A stretch of 64,000 nt of DNA from Ophelia neglecta (Eukaryota). Below the pieces are notes generated by a model. That model saw nothing but the letters and a program-made list of their open reading frames with translations. It made no database searches and was not told the DNA's origin. Position 1 is the stretch's first letter, and each line of letters starts with the position of its first letter. The position numbers and the translations under genes were made by a program. Of the stretch, positions 1,073 through 55,370 are shown in pieces. The stretch lies in contig OZ260666.1 of assembly GCA_965285935.1 (NCBI GenBank), forward strand, positions 51,460,001 through 51,524,000, read 5' to 3'.

Positions 1073-2257
1073 CTAAGATATTTGTGAAATTGAAACAATG
1101 CTAAGTTTTAATCTGGACTGTGTGAGAAAGTGGCACATTGTAAACAAGTTGTCTTTACATTTAGGAAAGACAGAAAGTATTTTATTCTGTTCTAAGCGTA
1201 AATCATCTAAGATTAGGTCATTGAGTGTTACTTGTGATGGCATCTCACTGGAATTTGGCAAGTGTAAAGTACTTTGGTGGTAATCTTGACCAAACATTGT
1301 GTGGTGAACTGATGGGAAAGCAGGCAATAAGGAAAATTAATTCCACAGTAAAGTTTCTATGCAGAAATTCAAACTTTATTCCTTCCAGTGTGGGCAAGTT
1401 GTTATGTACTTCTCTGGTCCAGTCACGATTCGACTATGGTTGTAAATTTTGGTATTCTGGTCTTTCTTCTTATACAAAGGAGAGACTTCAATGTGCCCAG
1501 AACAAGGTTATACGTTTTATTTTGAATCTGGACAGCCAGTCACACATTGGTATTGAGCAATTTAAAGTGTTATCTCTGTTACCAGTGGCTCCCAGAGTCC
1601 AATACCTGACTAATGTCCTGATGTATAAATGTTTAAATGGAAGGGCACCTAAGTATATATGTAATTTCGCCAGAGTAAATGAATTACATGGTTATCACAC
1701 CAGATCTAGTAATTTCAATGTGGTGCTACCAGTGATTAAGGGTAATGTTGGCAGAAATACTTTTAGGTATCAAGGTGCTTTAACTTGGAATGCTCTTCCC
1801 GGGTATGTCAAGTCCATCAGTAGTATCGAGACATTTAAGTCAAATTGTAAATCCTTTCTGCTAAATAGTTTTCACTGACTTGGTATCTGCCTGTAGGGAA
1901 TGTGACATGTTGTTTATTCGTTTCAAACATGTTTGGTAGCTTCATCCTGCAAATCGAGTGCTTCTTTTGCTGTGATAGTGGTATGTGATTTTTTGTGGAC
2001 AACCATGGAAATTAGTTTGTATTAAACTTTCTGGTGCTATCCCTTTCACTGGGTTACATATCTGTGTCATATCTGTGGTTTGTGCTCATCGGTGCAGTCT
2101 AAAATTGATGGTGCTATTTGTGATCTCATTATAGTCGGGCATGCTGGTCATTGTATAGGTTTTATTGCCTTATTTTTATTTTGAGGATGTATGTTCGATC
2201 TGTGATATATTGTATACTATGTTTTTACAGTGAATAAACTCAACTAAACTCAACTAA
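1073..2257 (+). mobile_element. 5'-truncated LINE (CR1/L2 group, Crack/Daphne-like): C-terminal RT region, 3' UTR and microsatellite tail
   Basis: One frame gives NKLSLHLGKTESILFCSKRK. After a frameshift near 1260-1280 the second gives SVKYFGGNLDQTL...LVQSRFDYGC...AQNKVIRFIL...HGYHTRS...GRNTFRYQGALTWNALP...FKSNCK (stop 1878). The element ends in AATAAA plus (CTCAACTAAA)x2 at about 2233-2257. Confidence 0.85.
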
Positions 2258-7622: not shown

Positions 7623-10600
7623 GTTTGTTAACTATTTATTTATATAAGATAGTAGGAGGGGTTAATGGCGAGGTGGTACATCTAGTCTGTAAGGCTTTTT
7701 ATTTTAAAGATTATTACAACTAATTACATAGTTTTCTTAGTTGTTGTATTATTGAAGTTTTGACACATGTGTTTCATTCAAGTGAGTAGAGTACCCATGG
7801 TTAAGCTGAATATGTAATAACATGCAGCCCTGTCATTTCAACCTTATCCCTGTTGATATACTAAAATCTTACGTGCTGTGACATTATGGGCTCATAAAAA
7901 GACGATAACATGTGATAATCTATCAGTTGCATGTTGTGCTCTCATTGTGGCCCTTTATTAAAAAGGAACTGATCAAATATTAATTGCACATATGGCGCTG
8001 TATATGCAGAAGGTTATTGTTATTCCCTGCTGAATATGCTTCAAAAAACATTTTACATATTTGACATCCTATTGCCAACATTGAGCCTGTTAGCGTGTGG
8101 CTTGATATGTAACTTTGTTCTTTAATTTGTCACTATCTTGACAAGAAATCAATTATTTACTGGAGATTTGGGACAAAGCCCCATGCATGTTCATAAAATT
8201 GTCCAAAGGTAGCTGCTTCACAAAAGGACCATCTGACAAGGCACTAAGTCTGAAATTAAGACTGCGGTCCTCTCTGATGGCAAGTGAAGGACTTACAAAG
8301 GATGAGAGAGTGAAATAAGGGGTTGCAACTGGGTATTATTAGTAAGACATGCGCAATGTTGTGCAAAGCATTAACAAAACCATTCTCTCTTTGTTTGGGT
8401 ATCCTGTCAAATGTGTGGCATTTCTACATGTCTGAAGATAAAAATTATCAATTCTGTTTCTGGAAGTTGAACCGAAGAATCATTAATAACGTATCAGTGC
8501 ATTGAAGTATTCTTTAAATATGCCTATAATTTTTTCCATGTTTGTCAGAAAGCTAGTAGCACTAGAAGATGTATTGTAGATTTAAGTAAAATCACCTTCC
8601 TTCCATTTCTGGGTACATGCCAGGAAAACTTCAGACAATGTGCTAGATAAAATGACTTTAAAATTCATGATTGGATGCACAGCAATTATAAATCCAGCTC
8701 ATGCATCTTTTATGTACTTGCACGTGTCAGGCAGAGCCCATTTTTTGGTGGAATTCAATCATAGGATTAGCATCATTGTTGTAATGAACACAGTAAAAAA
8801 CCTTTCTCATGATAATGTTAAGAAACCATTTTAGATATGATTTCATGATGTGTATTAAAAAAGTACATGGCAGCTGAGGAGAGGTTATCAATTTCTGTAG
8901 AAGTAGACAAAAAAGAGGAGCTTGGAAATTAGGAAAGCTGCATCATTAAAGATATTTATTACACTGTTAAATTTTACTTTAAAACTGATAGACTTTATAT
9001 TATGCAGGTCATATAGTTGGCCCTACATTTGGTTGTACTACATGAAAACTTGAGATTTAATCAACTCCACTCACAACCATCCTAAAAGTCTGCCTATAGC
9101 CTAATATGAATGTACTCTTTCAGGCACATGCTTCAATTCATAGTGCCAAGCCAAGCTGCAGCAGCCTTGGTTACCTATGTAAGCCACGTTTCCTTTGTTA
9201 TATTGTGCTACTATTTTAAGCACCATTCAGAGATGGGATAAGTACATGAGTCAGAATGCATCTCCAATCTTTCCCATCGCTTAGTAACAGCATTATATAT
9301 TAATATGAGGAGAGCTGTCAAGCTTATAATGCAACTGATATCGATTAATTTGGCTTGCCTCTGATTTAGCTATAAATTGAATGTATGCTTTCAAACAATT
9401 TGGACCGTTGCACTGTGGGTTGATGCATTTGGGTGCATACACATGTACGGTAAGTTGGCAAAATCAATAGTTTCTATTGATCACCTAAGTAAAGACTACA
9501 TAATTTGCAGATTATTCTGCCAGGAATCCATTAAGGCAATCAGAATTAGAAGTGAGCCAGGATATGTCAAGTTGCTTTCACAAAAACCCATGAAACATAC
9601 GTGCCGTGCACCCAGTTGTGTCTGAGCCATGAAAACTCAGCGAGTCGGAGTCTAGGATATTGATTCTTTTGGCCGATCTCGACTCACGTATGTGACTGTG
9701 GCAGCATGAGGGGCACAAGATTAACAAGAAATACATTGGTAAATATATGAAAATTAGGTTTGCCTCCAAGGTTTTCTCATTTCAGTGGAGGGCTTTGTTT
9801 ACTTAGGAATATCATAACATCTCGCTGCATTAGGCTCGACATCATCGCTTGATATTGCGGCTTTTCATTATTGTGTCTATAAGTATACGGTATGGGACTA
9901 TAAAATTACCGCTTAGCTGCATGAGGCTGGGGGCTTGTCAATATAGCGTTATAATTGCTTTGTATCTGAGAAGAGGACTGTACGTCCTTCTAGCTACGCT
10001 AGCCATCACCATTATGCACGTAGGAGATGTAATTTATGCATTGTGGCATGGGGTTAGTGCCATTTGAAAGGCAGGAAAAGATTTTATTGTTTGGCTGGCA
10101 GGGTATGCAAATGGATGATTGTGTGACAGAGCTACTGGCACTAACTGACAGGAACTTAAGACCTGCATGTGTCCTTTCTGGTGATGACAGAATATATCCC
10201 TTTATGGGACTTATCTAATGAATGGAATTCAGAAATTATAAAATTAGAACTAGTTAATCATGACTGAGATTTCTAGGAATAATTAGCTAATTGGTTCATG
10301 CTTGTTAGAAAACTAAATCTTTTATTTGAGTGAAGAGATTCTAACAACATCTGGATCAGTGACTTTATGTACTAATGGTGGGAACTTTGGATATATGCCT
10401 TCCTACCTATCTCAAGGTCTACAGACTCTTGGCATAAAAAACGGATTCCGTGAAATAATAAGGGGCCTAGAAGCCAGATGTATGTATGTTGCTGCAATCA
10501 GATGCAGCGGAAATCCTGTCTGAATTCATTCAACACATTTAGGTAATTCTGTGTATAGCTGTCAGTGCAGCGCTTGTGGACTTTATAACATTGTGCCATA

Positions 10601-11537
10601 CACTCTGCATGTTTCCTATCAAAATCTGGTGTGTTTCATCCCCTGATTATTTATACACTTGGCCAGAGGCAGGCTGACTGTTGTTACATACTTTGCATAG
10701 ATATAACACATATTGCAGGCTATATAAAAAGCCAGTGTGGCTATAGTGGCATGCTGTTGAAGCACACTATATCAAGTCTAGATCAGAAGTGTTGAGAATG
10801 TGCTGAGTGATTATTGTAATATATATATTAGTGTAGATGGCATCACCCCACATCACTTTATCACAGAATGCCATTCTCATCTCACCCATAGTTCACAGGC
10901 AATTGTGGCCGTTACTGTGGTGATGGGTATATAAGCATGGCCAAAATGATTTGAGTTACCTCACATCATTCCAGGAGAACATTCTCTCCTATTTGTCACA
11001 GACAGGTTCACAGATGTACAAGGTATGGCTGGGCGGCTGCTAGCAGACATTGTGGCATATTTATACAGAGATAAAGCATTGGAATGGTGCAGTCGAGCAT
11101 CTCATATCTTGCATATAATTCTGTATTTATGCGTTTGTGTGTGTAGTATGTCTGGCTTATGGATTGGCTATTATTAGACATATTATTCTATCTGAGGGTA
11201 GACTGTTTGTTTTTTTATAACACAAAAAGTATGCAGATTTCAAGTTTTACACATGGGTTTTCCACACTTTAATATTATGTTTATTTATGAAATGCATGAG
11301 TAATTTCCATTGTGTTGCCAGTTTACAACATTATGGTATTATGTTAATGATTTATGCAGATAAGGTGAGTATGTCTGAAGCTTTGTTCATAAAGCCATGT
11401 AGGCAAGCATTACTCATCACAAAGGTATTGAGTCATGTATTGCCTTCTGTTGTGCTGGCTTCCTCCACTTGTGCATGTCAAACTGTCATTGTTGTGAAAG
11501 GCCCCTCCATAACCAATATGTTTTCTTTATGTTCTAG

Positions 11538-12487
11538 GAAAAGAGGAAACAAGAAACAACCAAGAAAGATAGTGACATCTTCCAGTTTTGAATCTACAAT
11601 GACGACTGCCATGGCACTGCCCCTGAGCCTGAAGCGACCAGCCGAGGACTTCCCTGACTCTCCACCCAGCCCTAACACAGAGACAGTCACGCAGAACAGC
11701 CCTGTCAAACTTTACAATGTTCCTGTTAGTACAGAATCTCTTATCTCCTCTGGCAATGGAAGGGCCAAAAGGAGGAAGGGTGATCCCTTATACCTGAACA
11801 ACCTAGGAGTGTTCACAGACGTCGATTCAGAAAGTGGAGAGAGTCGTGAGGATGCTGAAAACTATCCAGACTTAGAATTTACAAATGACTATCCCAAAGA
11901 AAATAAGCCTGTTATGTCAAAGGAAGACAGCTTAGCCAAAGAGGACTTTCTGAACGGTACCCACCCATCAATGAACGGCCACCGTAGCTTCCCTTGTGTG
12001 TGGCTTGATAACACCATACCAGGTCGTAACTCAGAGGGAGGTGACAGGTCTCCAAACCCTTATCCACAAGCTCTGCCAATGGAGGGAGCCACTGTACCCT
12101 CGGAGCAAGTCAAACCTATCTGCACACCTAGGGGACCTTCCCCCAAACAACCCACAGCCGCTGCCGCCCCCACCCCAGTCAGCCGGTCGGGCTCTGCCAA
12201 CCACAAGCCAAACGGCATTTCAACACCCACAGGGATGCACAACCGTATCAACCAGCTGATTGGAGTAGAGAATGGCCTAAGCGATGACGCCGAATCTCCC
12301 ACCGACTCTGATGGAAACTCTGTGGAAGTTTGTCATGAGTGCCACAAGGTCTTCAAACGTAAAGTATATCTCCAGCGTCACATGGAGAGGGAGCACTGGT
12401 CCACTGCCAAAGTGTTTAAGTGTGAGGACTGCTCTTATGAAACCAAACACCAGAGCAATCTCTCTGTCCACCGCCGAACACACACAG
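11538..12487 (+). CDS. C2H2 zinc-finger transcription factor, main exon (fingers 1-2)
   Basis: Acceptor TTCTTTATGTTCTAG|G and donor CACACAG|GTAAGG. Encodes CHECHKVFKRKVYLQRHMEREH and CEDCSYETKHQSNLSVHRRTH-TG. In-exon ATGs at 11599 and 11611 (gccATGg). Protein is 715 aa with the 7606 exon, or 689 aa from 11599. Confidence 0.9.
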
Positions 12488-12658
12488 GTAAGGCAACAAA
12501 TACACTATATCTGCTCTAGCAAATCAGTAAGAATGTTAAATATTTAGGCAATGAAAGCTGTACAAAATATACAATATTCAAATATTTAAATGCATCTCTG
12601 GAGAAAGTTCTGCTTTCAATGTGACATTTTGATCAATTTATTTGACTCTTGATTGTAG

Positions 12659-13839
12659 GTGAGCGTCCTTATCACTGCGGAGCCTGTGGTCAGCGCTACA
12701 CACAGGGCCATCTCCTGAAGTCCCATATCCGCAGTCGTCATAGTGGAAACATGGAATTCTACAACCTGGAGAAAAAGTCAGAGAGCACTCGTGGTCGTAA
12801 GTCTTTGGACATGAAGCATGAGATTCTGTTAGGTGGTAACGCTAAGCAGGACAAGATCTCAGCCCTGCTACAGGCAGTCACCAGCCAGTCTAGTCAGCCC
12901 CCTCCTCCACAGCTGCCACTCAAGCCTTTTGGAAATCTCCTCTCACCCACCATGTCCAATATGTCCATGAATAACTACATGAACAGCATGTCTCCATTTT
13001 TTAGCACACTACGACCCATGATGACACCCCTTGGCAACAGCCTGCTAGGCCCTAGATTCTTCACTCTTGGTGGTATGCCTAACGGCATGCCCAACCCAGT
13101 AAACCAGATGCTTCCCTCTGCTATGCAGCAGTCCCTAAACATGTTAAATGGTCAAACTCTAGCCGCTTCTCTCGCCATGTCCCAACAAGCACAGAGTCCC
13201 AAGAAGCAAGAAGCCCAAAGTCCAGAGCAGACTAGCATCGAACAGAATGGAATTAGGATCCCACTGAAGATACCTGAAGTCCAAAGTCCTCCTTCCTACA
13301 AGAGTTCTTCTCCTTTACCACCAACTGCTGACCAAAGTGAAGAGTCCAGTATCCCGCAGGACCTAACGACTAAACGTCCTGAGAGTCGTGAGACAAGCAG
13401 TATACAGAGGGTTGCTGAGAGTCTGCGTCTTGCCGCGGCCAGTCGAGCCGCGCCGGTTAAGGCCCAGACCCGAGAGGAGCCTGAGGACTTGTCCAGTGCC
13501 AGGCACACCCCCTCCACCATGTTTAACCCCCCAGAACCTCTCCCCGCTGAGTCGGTACCTCTGGTCTCAGAGGTGCTGCCACCCAGCGAGGTGATGCTGA
13601 AGCTGCGTCCAGAACATGCCCACACAGCAGAGACCTCCGCATTGGCTGCCTGCAACTGCAATCACCTCCATCAACTGAAAACCCTGAGAAAAAATGTGTT
13701 CCGAATGCTGAGCGTGTTCACTCCAGATCTCAGCAGAGATAGCTCCATTGATTTTGAAACTGATGAGGTGGATGAGCTTCTGCATGAGGTTATCTACAGC
13801 AACATAGATGACGACTGCTTCAAGCCTAAGAATGACTGA
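12659..13839 (+). CDS. C2H2 zinc-finger transcription factor, last exon (finger 3, low-complexity region, PxDLS motifs, C-terminal helical domain)
   Basis: Splicing the 171-nt intron restores the canonical TGERPY linker, followed by CGACGQRYTQGHLLKSHIRSRH. PQDLT and PEDLS motifs; TGA at 13837-13839. Confidence 0.92.
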
Positions 13840-50342: not shown

Positions 50343-50579
50343 TTGATTTTCAATTTTGTATAACTTCAATTGATTATTGACCTGCAATACTAAGGGCACC
50401 TACAAAGTGTTAAAGAGCCTATGTAAATCTAGTAATCCTCATAATAATAATTTATATTTTGCCCGTAATAATTCACACACATTTAAATTTAATTTTTATT
50501 TTGCTGGGCAAATTATTAGAGTTAAAAGGGCACTTTTCAATCCAGCCAGCGTTATGATGTTTTACATCACTGTTCACAG

Positions 50580-50694
50580 GGGTAAGCTGACCAGAGTACT
50601 GAAGCAGTTTACACCTTATGTATGGACAGACTTTGAGTGGCGGCCAACTTCCAGTCTTAAACGCTGGATTGCTATGCTGTGGCTCATAAACATT
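50580..50694 (+). CDS. PTDSS2: PSS2 exon 8
   Basis: GKLTRVLKQFTPYVWTDFEWRPTSSLKRWIAMLWLINI. Confidence 0.96.
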
Positions 50695-50945
50695 GTGAGT
50701 AACAAAGTCAAGTTGTACCTGTTTTACCCGTTAATCAATTCTCATAAAAAGATAGATCAGTATGGTGAGTTGAATCATTGCTCATATTATCTTAGAGCAG
50801 CCCCCTTTCAGAATCCAGGAGAGGGACAGGAATTTAAGCTGTTTAGTTAATTTCCTCAGCCCTACTTGCCTTCTTCCTACCCATAATATATAATGAATAT
50901 GATTTTTAGGAGTTTCAGAGTTCTGCATAATTATCTTTGTTTCAG

Positions 50946-53300: not shown

Positions 53301-54982
53301 ACTACCATAATGAACTACCAACCTTTGTACTGACTTAAGAAAGAGTCTCAGTTCATTTCACAAGTAGAATTCCAAATTTTAATAATTAGTTTGGAAATAT
53401 TCCTGATTGGTAGGAATATGGCAAAAGGACATGTTTTTTTATTTTTTACTATTTACATTGTCATTTTACATATCAGTACATGTATTTAACAATTAGGCCA
53501 ATTATGCAAGCAAAATAAAATTCCTTTTATATATGATTCGGGTTTCAATAATCAATGTGCAATAGAGTTGCAATTCTGGACTGTTTTTTGGATTCTTTTT
53601 TTTTCAAAATTACTACTGATATAATGCAAATTATTCAATGTTATTGTTTGCAGGGATGAATACCCTATATTTGGCCATGAACTGATTAACTTGTTGCAGA
53701 CTTCTGAAAAAGTTGTCACCATTGCAATGGAAATTAACAAAATGGCTTAATTTTATATCAAATGTGAATTCTTAAGTATGGCCACAACACCTTTGGTAAT
53801 TGGCAAAACTGATAATTTTAGGTGGCATTTCTTACCATTTCAGGCAAGTTCTAGTGTTCTGAGCAAATGTTATTTAGTAGGGCTTATCTGGGACTCTATA
53901 AAATTTGGGATTTTATATATTGTAGTTGCAGTTCTTGATATTTAAAAAAAAATCAGTTTCTTTAAGGGGTTATGATTATTGTGGAAAGATGATTTCTTTT
54001 GAGGTCAACAGGTTTGCAGATAATTTGACAATCCATACGAATAGGTGGGGGCCATGATTTCTTAATGCCTTGTAGTAATAGAGCTTAGCTTGTTACTGGC
54101 TTTTTACCAGGCTCTACACATAAATATACATATATCTATATAAAAGAGAATAAAACTTCCAATTGACTTGAATAAATTTACCCCATGTAGAGTGAAAATC
54201 TGTATACTGAACCTTTTGTGTGATTGAATTGATATACATGTGCAGTGACATTTTTATTCTATTCGAGCAATTATAAAGTGAATTTTTGTTGCAGCAGCTG
54301 ATTGCAAATGTCTTAAGAAGTAGGGGGGGGGGGGGGGGGGAGGGGCGCAGTGCATTGTTTTATTTAATACATGGTCTGTATTACCGAATTAAATGCAACA
54401 AATCCATCTTTCTGAAGACAAGTGTATATTTCTGTAACAAAATAAAGCTGCAGTAGCATTATTTAGATGGGCAAAGGGTGAAATTGCTTTTTTTGGGTCA
54501 CAGCCTGGCTCCAATATGATGGTAATGTTACAGTGTGTTACAATATTCTACTTACAATGTGTTACAATGTATGTCAGTTTAATTTTCACCTGCTACCATT
54601 CATAATCTGCATTTTCACATGGACATGTTATAAGTAGATTTACCTGTATGTACTGTGATATCTCATTACCACTGTTGGCTCCAAAATTTTAATATTTATT
54701 TCTTTAACATGTTTTCACAGTTTTAGTTTATTTTAGTGTCCTATTAATCTGTACCATAATGATCCCATTATACCTGGTTCATCAAATGCAAGAAAGAATA
54801 TTTTCCTTCTAGAATAGTATTTAATATATTTATACATATATATCATAGTGTAGGCAGTTTGAATGCTGTGAATACTTTCAGATCTGTCCTTTGCATTTAA
54901 TGTTAGAATTTCTTAATGACTTATATTAAGTTCCTATATTATATAATATCTTTCATAACTGTATGTCTTCTGCCCTTTCCAG

Positions 54983-55370
54983 CAATTGTAAGAAGTTTGG
55001 TACCCAGACATGGATTGTAGCCACAATAATTTTGACTGAGGTTCTGATAACACTAAAATTTGACTGGGAGACGATCACACAGCCCCTTCCACCCCATGTG
55101 GCCACCTTCTGGATCTTGGGGGTGATTGTCCTGGGCTTGTGGACCATCTGGCACTTCTATATACAGAGGCTGGTCTGGCATACAGAACAGAAACTGGAGA
55201 ATTCCAAGGCAGGTCTGCTTGCTGCTAACAACAACTTGGAACCAGCGGACCAAATTAAGTCACTCAACCACCAGAAAAATATGACAGCAAAACTTAACAG
55301 TGGTATTGCTGAAAATGGTCAAACTTCATCACCTTCCAAAACCAAGTCAAAAGCTAAGAAGGCTCATTAG
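54983..55370 (+). CDS. PTDSS2: PSS2 exon 10 (last)
   Basis: Acceptor TTTCCAG|C; encodes NCKKFGTQTWIVATIILTEVLITLKFD...KAKKAH*. Confidence 0.95.

What the first reader, a model, noticed from the sequence alone, without database searches (positions are those of the whole stretch)
13675..13812. C2H2 zinc-finger protein ends in a MORC3/MORC4-like C-terminal module: possible sequence-specific MORC adaptor
Seen: after a long low-complexity tract the protein ends in an ordered amphipathic segment, LKTLRKNVFRMLSVFTPDLSRDSSIDFETDEVDELLHEVIYSN. Recalled, not searched: human MORC3 ends roughly [39 protein letters not shown], and MORC4 ends similarly (..LLTSVLPHLELREIGYDSEQVDGILYTVLEAN). The shared pattern is LxxLRxNVxx[LM]LxxxxPDL(x4-5)[IV]x[FY][DE]xDxVDE[IL]LxxV. 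MORC C-terminal coiled-coil regions mediate dimerisation. This protein has no GHKL ATPase or CW domain. Inference: a DNA-binding factor that homodimerises or heterodimerises with MORC3/4 could target MORC chromatin silencing to specific sequences. That would be conceptually like ApiAP2-MORC in apicomplexans, but through a shared dimerisation tail. I do not recognise a named animal gene with this architecture.
Basis: partly seen in the sequence, partly recalled or inferred. Interest (0 to 1): 0.85.

Follow-up and report, generated by a model that had tools for sequence, protein, structure and literature searches.

The report
Zinc-finger repressor with a MORC-type tail
A three-finger DNA-binding protein of a probable annelid ends in a short folded module that this animal's own MORC chromatin ATPase also carries, which suggests, without yet showing, a direct link between a sequence-specific factor and MORC silencing.

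Summary
Window 13675-13803 encodes the quoted peptide. It lies in the last exon of a two-coding-exon gene, 11599-12487 plus 12659-13839, for a 689-aa protein.

- **Architecture:** three C2H2 fingers, a disordered linker with two PxDLS (CtBP-type) motifs, and an ordered helix-loop-helix tail of about 55 aa (AF2 pLDDT 83-92).
- **Conservation:** the tail is almost unchanged in more than 45 orthologues. The named ones are Capitella, Paralvinella, Mytilus and Candidula.
- **MORC link, tested with tool-derived sequences:** the animal's own MORC gene (contig C7; Morc6_S5 and zf-CW exons) has a last exon ending in the same kind of module. The ZF-tail and MORC-tail profiles align end to end: hhalign probability 93.7%, P 1.9e-7, score 36.7. 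Column-shuffled controls gave 9.7 ± 2.2, maximum 17.3.
- **MORC ownership of that exon:** in another species' contig, S5, CW and tail exons lie within 2.9 kb on one strand.
- **A third carrier:** a 1,885-aa disordered protein on C5 carries two tandem copies.
- **No reference:** no Pfam family or solved structure covers the module.

The adaptor idea is untested. Verdict: tail homology supported, mechanism only inferred.

The parts
11538..12487 (+). First coding exon. The acceptor is ttctag|G at 11537/11538. The CDS starts at ATG 11599 (MTTAMALPLSLKRP...). The exon carries the N-terminal region, a KRRK basic patch, the FPCVWLxN motif, and fingers 1 and 2. The donor is G|GTAAGG at 12487/12488.
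   Evidence: The sequence was read. The N-terminus and the FPCVW motif match Capitella P0007, Paralvinella P0067, P0009 and P0011. Whether a 5' non-coding exon lies upstream was not determined.
12328..12396 (+). C2H2 zinc finger 1
   Evidence: Pfam zf-C2H2 matches residues 264-286 of the exon's translation (window 11539-12486), whole-protein E 1.2e-9.
12415..12486 (+). C2H2 zinc finger 2. Its HTGERPY linker is completed across the intron.
   Evidence: Pfam zf-C2H2_16 and zf-H2C2_5 match residues 293-316. Orthologues read ...HRRTHTGERPYHCG... without interruption.
12488..12658 (+). Phase-1 intron of 171 nt, GT..AG.
   Evidence: Sequence read. The junction restores the finger linker seen in the intron-free orthologue proteins.
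12659..13839 (+). Last exon: finger 3, disordered linker, tail, and stop codon TGA at 13837-13839.
12670..12741 (+). C2H2 zinc finger 3
   Evidence: The Pfam zf-C2H2 match is weak on this exon alone (E 0.09, residues 4-27). AF2 pLDDT is 86-93 over residues 1-30. The finger is invariant across orthologues.
13252..13275 (+). IRIPLKIP motif: alternating hydrophobic and basic residues, ending in Pro.
   Evidence: A regex finds it at the homologous place in 15 of 44 family members. P205 is nearly invariant. Its function is unknown.
13354..13368 (+). PQDLT(TKR): first PxDLS-type (CtBP-binding-type) motif.
   Evidence: 37 of 44 family members carry at least one P.[DN]L[ST] match, in most at this aligned position (four of the 37 match only elsewhere or not at all here). 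D234 and L235 are nearly invariant. Reading it as a CtBP motif rests on established knowledge of PxDLS motifs. Binding was not tested.
13480..13494 (+). PEDLS(SAR): second PxDLS-type motif.
   Evidence: Present in the closest orthologues and in several others.
13645..13818 (+). C-terminal helix-loop-helix module, the finding itself. Helix 1 is about 13660-13719 and helix 2 about 13765-13818.
   Evidence: Conservation. AF2 pLDDT 83-92. Homology to the MORC tail and the C5 tandem copies.

Best explanation
The finding is the end of a 689-aa nuclear C2H2 protein with these parts:
- three fingers that presumably read DNA;
- a long disordered linker with two conserved PxDLS motifs of the kind that recruit the CtBP corepressor;
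- a C-terminal helix-loop-helix module of about 55 aa.

The module is homologous to the module at the C-terminal end of the animal's own CW-type MORC. It is also homologous to two tandem copies at the end of a 1,885-aa disordered protein. I take it to be a protein-protein association unit that works like an HLH and pairs into a helical bundle. On that reading the zinc-finger protein dimerises through it and may co-assemble with the other carriers, MORC included. It would then be a sequence-specific repressor with two effector handles, CtBP and a MORC-type tail.

**Shown:** the gene model, the domains, the conservation, the ordered fold and the homology of the three tails.

**Inferred:** DNA binding, CtBP recruitment, dimerisation, and any contact with MORC.
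For: - **Gene model and orthologues:**
- **Fingers only in Pfam:**
- **Tail conserved:** 42 of 48 hits plus 5 more.
- **Tail ordered:** AF2 pLDDT 83-92, with everything between finger 3 and the tail below 50.
- **Own-genome search with the tail:** it finds only the C5 protein. That protein holds two copies scoring 35.1 and 18.0 bits against the ZF-tail HMM.
- **ZF profile versus MORC profile (hhalign):** probability 93.7%, P 1.9e-7, score 36.7. Of 200 column shuffles the mean was 9.7, SD 2.2, maximum 17.3. The reversed profile scored 8.0.
- **Other profile pairs:** ZF versus C5, probability 96.5%, E 7.8e-10. MORC versus C5, 63.9%, E 6.6e-5.
- **Three-family alignment:** clean, with invariant L, V, L and P, and a co-linear second block [VI]D[ED][LI][LV]xE[VM][IV]xxN.
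- **The MORC-type tail belongs to MORC:**
  - It is unique in the 762-Mb genome.
  - It lies 7.3 kb downstream, on the same strand, of the C7 zf-CW exon and the Morc6_S5 exons.
  - A weak HATPase_c_3 exon lies further upstream on that strand.
  - In contig L019 of another species, three Morc6_S5 pieces, zf-CW and the tail exon are co-linear within 2.9 kb.
- **Hints of dimerisation:**
  - About 18 of the 50 listed structural matches of the modelled tail are bHLH dimerisation domains. These are weak (Z 3.2-4.9).
  - One protein carries two tandem copies.
  - A review states that MORC3 homodimerises through its coiled-coil region (PMC8627505).
- **PxDLS motifs conserved:**
Against: - No interaction evidence of any kind was obtained. 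The single ZF-tail plus MORC-tail complex prediction was below the mark (0.02, 0.33, 0.01; 'no answer').
- Direct HMM-to-sequence scores between ZF and MORC tails are weak. The ZF HMM scores 8.6-20 bits on MORC tails. The MORC HMM scores 15.3 bits on the window tail. The homology therefore rests on profile-profile comparison and on the C5 intermediate.
- The loop is 5 residues shorter in the MORC tails.
- The fold matches have Z below 5, which the tool itself rates as a common arrangement only.
- Pfam HLH does not hit the tail.
- The GHKL part of the C7 MORC was seen only as one weak exon-level hit (23.5 bits).
Confidence: 0.55

Rival explanations
1. This is the strict adaptor model. The tail exists to heterodimerise with the MORC tail. 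The zinc-finger protein would then deliver the MORC ATPase to specific DNA sequences.
For: - The same module sits at the C-terminal end of both proteins in one genome.
- The positions that are invariant within each family are the same ones in both families.
- MORC C-terminal regions are reported to mediate dimerisation (PMC8627505).
Against: - The complex prediction gave no answer.
- The loop length differs by 5 residues between the two families.
- The ZF tail is closer to the C5 protein's copies than to MORC's. A ZF-C5 or ZF-ZF pairing is therefore at least as likely.
- The protein already has a conventional effector handle, PxDLS.
Confidence: 0.25
2. This is the common-partner model. The module does not pair with itself. 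It is a docking site for one shared third protein, for example a nuclear-body scaffold, a SUMO-pathway enzyme or a corepressor. The three carriers would then be clients of the same machinery.
For: - Three otherwise unrelated architectures share the module.
- The exposed charged and polar positions (R343, N345, D371, E376, N381) are as conserved as the hydrophobic ones. That fits a ligand surface.
- The MORC last exon also carries a conserved SIM-like VIxID-acidic stretch.
Against: - No candidate partner was identified.
- Two tandem copies in one protein, and the HLH-like geometry, fit self-pairing somewhat better.
Confidence: 0.2
3. This is the convergence model. The resemblance to MORC tails would be chance similarity of two amphipathic helices. 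The tail would then be a lineage-specific feature of this zinc-finger family, unrelated to MORC.
For: - Single-sequence and HMM-to-sequence scores between the two families are not significant on a database scale.
- Helical segments of similar composition can give spurious profile matches.
Against: - The profile-profile score is about 12 SD above column shuffles that keep composition, and the reversed profile scores at noise level.
- The match is end to end, with two co-linear blocks, the same 12-residue R-to-P spacing and a shared terminal Asn.
- The C5 copies bridge both families.
Confidence: 0.07

Closest known systems
Animal CW-type MORC ATPases. Here the comparison is with the animal's own C7 MORC and with invertebrate MORC last exons.
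   Same: A C-terminal helix-loop-helix module. It reads L-x2-L-R-x-N/S-V-x2-L-L-x4-P-[DE]-[LF], then a loop, then [VI]-D-x-[IL]-[VL]-x-E-[MV]-[VI]-x-x-N, close to the C-terminus.
   Different: The window protein has no GHKL ATPase, no S5 domain and no CW finger. It has three C2H2 fingers and PxDLS motifs instead. Its loop is 5 residues longer. The tail is not preceded by a coiled coil.
CtBP-recruiting C2H2 repressors (ZEB1/2, ZNF217, KLF3/8/12, Ikaros family; from general knowledge). NCBI's automatic name for the Mytilus relative is 'ZEB2-like'.
   Same: C2H2 fingers, plus a PxDLS-type motif followed by basic residues in a disordered region.
   Different: It has only one cluster of three fingers and no homeodomain. 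None of these repressors is known to me to carry a MORC-type tail. No vertebrate or arthropod protein with the tail was seen among the 120 listed hits.
ApiAP2-MORC-HDAC3 complexes of Apicomplexa (for example PMC10781626, listed).
   Same: The concept is the same: sequence-specific DNA binders that partner with MORC.
   Different: The DNA-binding domain is different (AP2). No shared tail is known. The link is by analogy only.
bHLH / HLH dimerisation domains
   Same: The predicted geometry is a long helix ending before a Pro, then a loop, then a second helix. About 18 of the 50 listed fold matches are bHLH proteins.
   Different: Z is only 3.2-4.9. Pfam HLH does not match. There is no basic region. 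The position is C-terminal. The resemblance is one of shape and is not evidence of membership.

Membership tests
MORC family | GHKL (HATPase_c_3) ATPase domain | tested here: not met
   Pfam on both exons at E up to 1 finds only zinc-finger families.
MORC family | S5-fold domain (Morc6_S5) | tested here: not met
   One search gives no hit. The same model does find the real MORC genes of this genome on C7 and C12.
[quoted passage not shown]
   One search gives no hit. zf-CW is found at four other loci of the genome.
MORC family | C-terminal helix-loop-helix tail module. This is not a formal defining feature. It is shared by the tail-bearing MORCs found here. | tested here: met
   hhalign probability 93.7%, P 1.9e-7, with shuffle controls. 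Three-family alignment A4.
C2H2 zinc-finger proteins | C-x2-C...H-x3-5-H fingers joined by TGERP-type linkers | tested here: met
   Pfam zf-C2H2 E 1.2e-9. Three fingers are conserved in the orthologues.
CtBP-dependent repressors | PxDLS motif in a disordered region | tested here: met
   PQDLT and PEDLS lie at 13354-13368 and 13480-13494. A match is present in 37 of 44 relatives, in most at the first site.
CtBP-dependent repressors | Physical binding to CtBP and CtBP-dependent repression | not testable with these tools
   This needs a binding or reporter assay.
ZEB family (the automatic name of the Mytilus relative) | Two separated finger clusters flanking a homeodomain | tested here: not met
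   There is one cluster of three fingers and no homeodomain in Pfam. The full-length relatives look the same.
bHLH | Match to the HLH profile, with a basic region | tested here: not met
   No Pfam hit on the tail at E up to 1. Only weak fold resemblance, Z below 5.

The most novel reading that the evidence does not exclude
The roughly 55-aa tail is an undescribed homotypic association domain. It would physically wire three proteins into one targeted silencing assembly: a sequence-specific C2H2/CtBP repressor, a giant disordered scaffold carrying two copies, and the CW-type MORC ATPase. That would be a direct, genetically encoded way of aiming MORC at DNA sequences in animals.
Probability: 0.2. 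Interest if true: 0.8.

Novelty: new variant of a known kind. Interest (0 to 1): 0.6.

Why it matters
How animal MORC ATPases are brought to particular loci is still largely open. The known routes are histone marks, HUSH, and SUMO or DAXX.

A conserved family of DNA-binding proteins that carries MORC's own C-terminal module offers a concrete, testable recruitment route. It also defines a small folded domain with no Pfam family and no solved relative.

A third, very large disordered protein holds two copies. That points to a small interaction network and makes a one-off domain shuffle less likely.

Two limits apply. The named family members are so far only annelids and molluscs, and nothing functional has been shown.

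Tried and rejected
- **Complex prediction:** ZF tail plus own MORC tail scored 0.02, 0.33 and 0.01 against a mark of 0.34. The verdict was 'no answer'. The controls were not run and the alignments were not used. This is evidence neither for nor against binding.\n- **AF2 of the C5 tandem region, single sequence:** mean pLDDT 44. It is usable only for secondary structure.\n- **ESM Atlas look-alikes:** no usable hit for the ZF tail or the C5 tail region.\n- **PDB sequence searches:** nothing below E 0.09 with the ZF tail, the MORC tail or the three-family profile.\n- **Tail-only search with P0011, residues 600-672:** only 15 candidates and nothing new. That tail is too idiosyncratic for a word-based search.\n- **Linking the MORC tail to MORC through other contigs:** L017, L020 and P0052 gave no MORC domain upstream. 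One carried a retroelement fragment instead. L019 succeeded.\n- **Names of unnamed tail-bearing proteins:** cluster look-up returned none.\n- **Own GHKL exons:** regex searches for the Bergerat motifs in 30 kb (C7 25174200-25204199, taking in the CW and S5 exons and about 22 kb upstream of them) found nothing. A weak HATPase_c_3 exon lies just beyond, at C7 25205396-25205581.\n- **Second MORC gene (C12):** no tail was found in the 30 kb searched downstream.

Full report
**Observation**

The region has about 50% G+C against about 36% around it.

**Gene model**

- The open frame upstream has an acceptor at 11537/11538. The start codon is ATG 11599. Its first residues (MTTAMALPLSLKRP) match the N-termini of the Capitella, Paralvinella and other relatives.
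- The first coding exon ends at 12487 (G|GTAAGG).
- A 171-nt phase-1 intron ends at 12658.
- The last exon runs 12659-13839.
- The junction rebuilds the finger linker HTGERPY, which intron-free orthologue proteins show uninterrupted.
- The CDS is 689 codons.
I never built or submitted the joined protein.

**Domains and motifs**

- Pfam finds only C2H2 fingers: two in exon 1 and one at the start of exon 2. It finds nothing in the last 75 residues.
- AF2 with a 44-sequence family alignment models finger 3 with pLDDT 86-93. Nearly everything from residue 48 to 324 of the last exon's translation is below 50.
- The tail has block-mean pLDDT 83-92, with helices at 334-353 and 369-386.
- The linker holds short conserved islands:
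  - IRIPLKIP at 13252-13275;
  - PQDLT(TKR) at 13354-13368;
  - PEDLS(SAR) at 13480-13494.
- 37 of 44 relatives carry a P.[DN]L[ST] match, in most at the first site, and it is usually followed by Lys or Arg. From established knowledge this is the PxDLS type of CtBP-binding motif. The reading is inference, and binding was not tested.

**The family**

- The last exon finds 48 relatives at E up to 4e-129. 42 of them keep the tail almost unchanged.
- A profile of five full-length members adds Paralvinella palmiformis LSH36_280g03030, a Candidula unifasciata protein and three unnamed full-length proteins with the tail.
- The named members are annelids (Capitella CAPTEDRAFT_187265, Paralvinella) and molluscs (Mytilus 'ZEB2-like', Candidula).
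- Among the 120 listed hits, no vertebrate or arthropod protein carries the tail. This is a length-limited, word-seeded search, so absence is not shown.
- The window's closest named relatives are annelids. The genome is therefore probably an annelid's, by inference.

**Is the tail MORC-like?**

No tool here supplies human MORC3/4, and I ran no recalled letters. I looked in the animal's own 762-Mb genome instead.

- *Locating the MORC genes.* Morc6_S5 and zf-CW place two MORC genes, one on C7 and one on C12, both on the minus strand.
- *The C7 tail exon.*
  - It lies 7.3 kb downstream of the C7 CW exon on the same strand.
  - The open frame is 273 aa and ends in a segment of the pattern KLxNLRxSVxELLKxILPEF...IDDIVVEMVRVN.
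  - It is the only such segment in the genome.
  - A weak HATPase_c_3 exon lies further upstream on the same strand.
- *Relatives of that exon.* An exhaustive search with it found 17 proteins. Fifteen of them are short last-exon-type fragments with the same tail, and one more (P0056, 709 aa) carries it internally.
- *Proof that the exon belongs to MORC.* The contig of one relative (L019) shows three Morc6_S5 pieces (7962-8517), zf-CW (8972-9127) and the tail exon (10025-10810). They lie on one strand within 2.9 kb and are co-linear with the C7 exons by tblastx.

**Statistics of the resemblance**

| Comparison | Result |
|---|---|
| ZF-tail profile (42 seqs) vs MORC-tail profile (17 seqs), hhalign | 50 columns end to end, probability 93.7%, P 1.9e-7, score 36.7 |
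| 200 column shuffles of the MORC alignment | mean 9.7, SD 2.2, maximum 17.3 |
| Reversed MORC alignment | 8.0 |
| ZF HMM on MORC tails | 8.6-20 bits |
| MORC HMM on the window tail | 15.3 bits |

- I found the C7 exon by scanning about 4,000 open-frame pieces. Allowing for that leaves roughly 1e-3.
- The direct HMM-to-sequence scores are weak, so the case rests on profile-profile comparison and on an intermediate family.
- The alignment has one 5-residue loop difference. The conserved positions coincide:
  - the two Leu before Arg;
  - Arg-x-[NS]-Val;
  - the Leu pair;
  - Pro exactly 12 residues after Arg;
  - a second ungapped block [VI]D[ED][LI][LV]xE[VM][IV]xxN.

**A third carrier**

- Searching the own genome with the ZF tail gave one other locus, C5 6547334-6547489 (E 0.033).
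- It lies in an uninterrupted 1,885-codon frame, C5 6542063-6547717, with no Pfam domain.
- That protein holds two tandem copies. They score 35.1 and 18.0 bits with the ZF HMM, and 17.1 and 5.8 bits with the MORC HMM.
- hhalign gives ZF versus C5 at probability 96.5% (E 7.8e-10), and MORC versus C5 at 63.9% (E 6.6e-5).
- With C5 added, the ZF profile reaches 26 bits on MORC tails.
- A seven-sequence, three-family profile (A4) recovers exactly these four copies in the genome and nothing else.

**What the module may do**

- No Pfam family, no solved structure by sequence and no Atlas look-alike covers it.
- The best structural matches of the modelled tail are weak, with Z no higher than 4.9. About 18 of the 50 listed rows are bHLH dimerisation domains. 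I take that as a shape resemblance only.
- Three things favour an association or dimerisation role:
  - the tandem pair in the C5 protein;
  - the position at protein ends;
  - the reported homodimerisation of MORC3 through its coiled-coil region (PMC8627505).
- I commit to this as the most likely mechanism, at about 0.55 for the whole statement.
- Whether the partner is itself, the C5 protein, MORC or a shared third protein is open. The only complex prediction allowed, ZF tail with MORC tail, returned 'no answer'.

**Verdict**

- The claim that the tail is a MORC-type module is supported with tool-derived invertebrate sequences.
- The human comparison is unverified.
- The adaptor mechanism is plausible but untested, at about 0.25 for the strict form.
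- The protein is not a MORC: GHKL, S5 and CW were tested and are absent. It is a C2H2 protein with CtBP-type motifs and a new kind of effector tail.
- I rate it a new variant of a known kind, with interest 0.6.

Noticed in passing
G000:C5:6542063-6547717 (+); loci L012:4064-9718 and L002:1-1884: An uninterrupted 1,885-codon frame for a serine- and proline-rich, apparently disordered protein with no Pfam domain. It ends in two tandem copies of the same tail module, about 80 residues apart. Its identity and relatives are unknown.
   Followed up: partly
window 13252-13275; L013 (MORC last exon, 'GLKIKLNIPKK'); L012 ORF N-terminus ('GLKITLKR', 'PLKICLRL', 'IPKIKIKPI'): All three tail-bearing proteins also carry a short motif of alternating hydrophobic and basic residues, [LI][KR]IxL[KN]. 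In the zinc-finger protein and MORC a Pro follows (IP). From memory it resembles the peptides that bind the ET domain of BET proteins. Seeing it together with the tail in three unrelated architectures is unexplained.
   Followed up: no
L013:1854-2648 (-) = G000:C7:25166053-25166847: The MORC last exon has a conserved hydrophobic-acidic stretch, VILVDSGSESDS (family consensus VIxID), followed by KPD..L. It looks like a SUMO-interaction motif with a phospho-serine or acidic tail.
   Followed up: no
G000:C12:22372648-22373399 (-): A second MORC gene has Morc6_S5 and zf-CW exons. No convincing tail module was found in the 30 kb searched downstream, so only one of the two MORC paralogues seems to carry the tail.
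   Followed up: partly
window 50377-50847 and 54963-55367 (+): Two open frames match Pfam PSS (phosphatidylserine synthase) at model positions 155-207 and 246-272. They are probably exons of a PTDSS gene downstream of the zinc-finger gene.
   Followed up: partly
window 1225-1878 (+): A 217-aa open frame with no Pfam hit. From memory it resembles the region after the reverse transcriptase in non-LTR retrotransposon ORF2 proteins. This is unverified.
   Followed up: partly
L020:6067-6807 (+): In another species, a reverse-transcriptase-like fragment (RVT_1, E 0.0011, below cut-off) lies in the intron upstream of the MORC-type tail exon.
   Followed up: no
P0056 (709 aa, ENA contig of 1 Mb): One relative carries the MORC-type module internally, at residues about 213-275, followed by more than 400 acidic, low-complexity residues. 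The module is therefore not always C-terminal.
   Followed up: no
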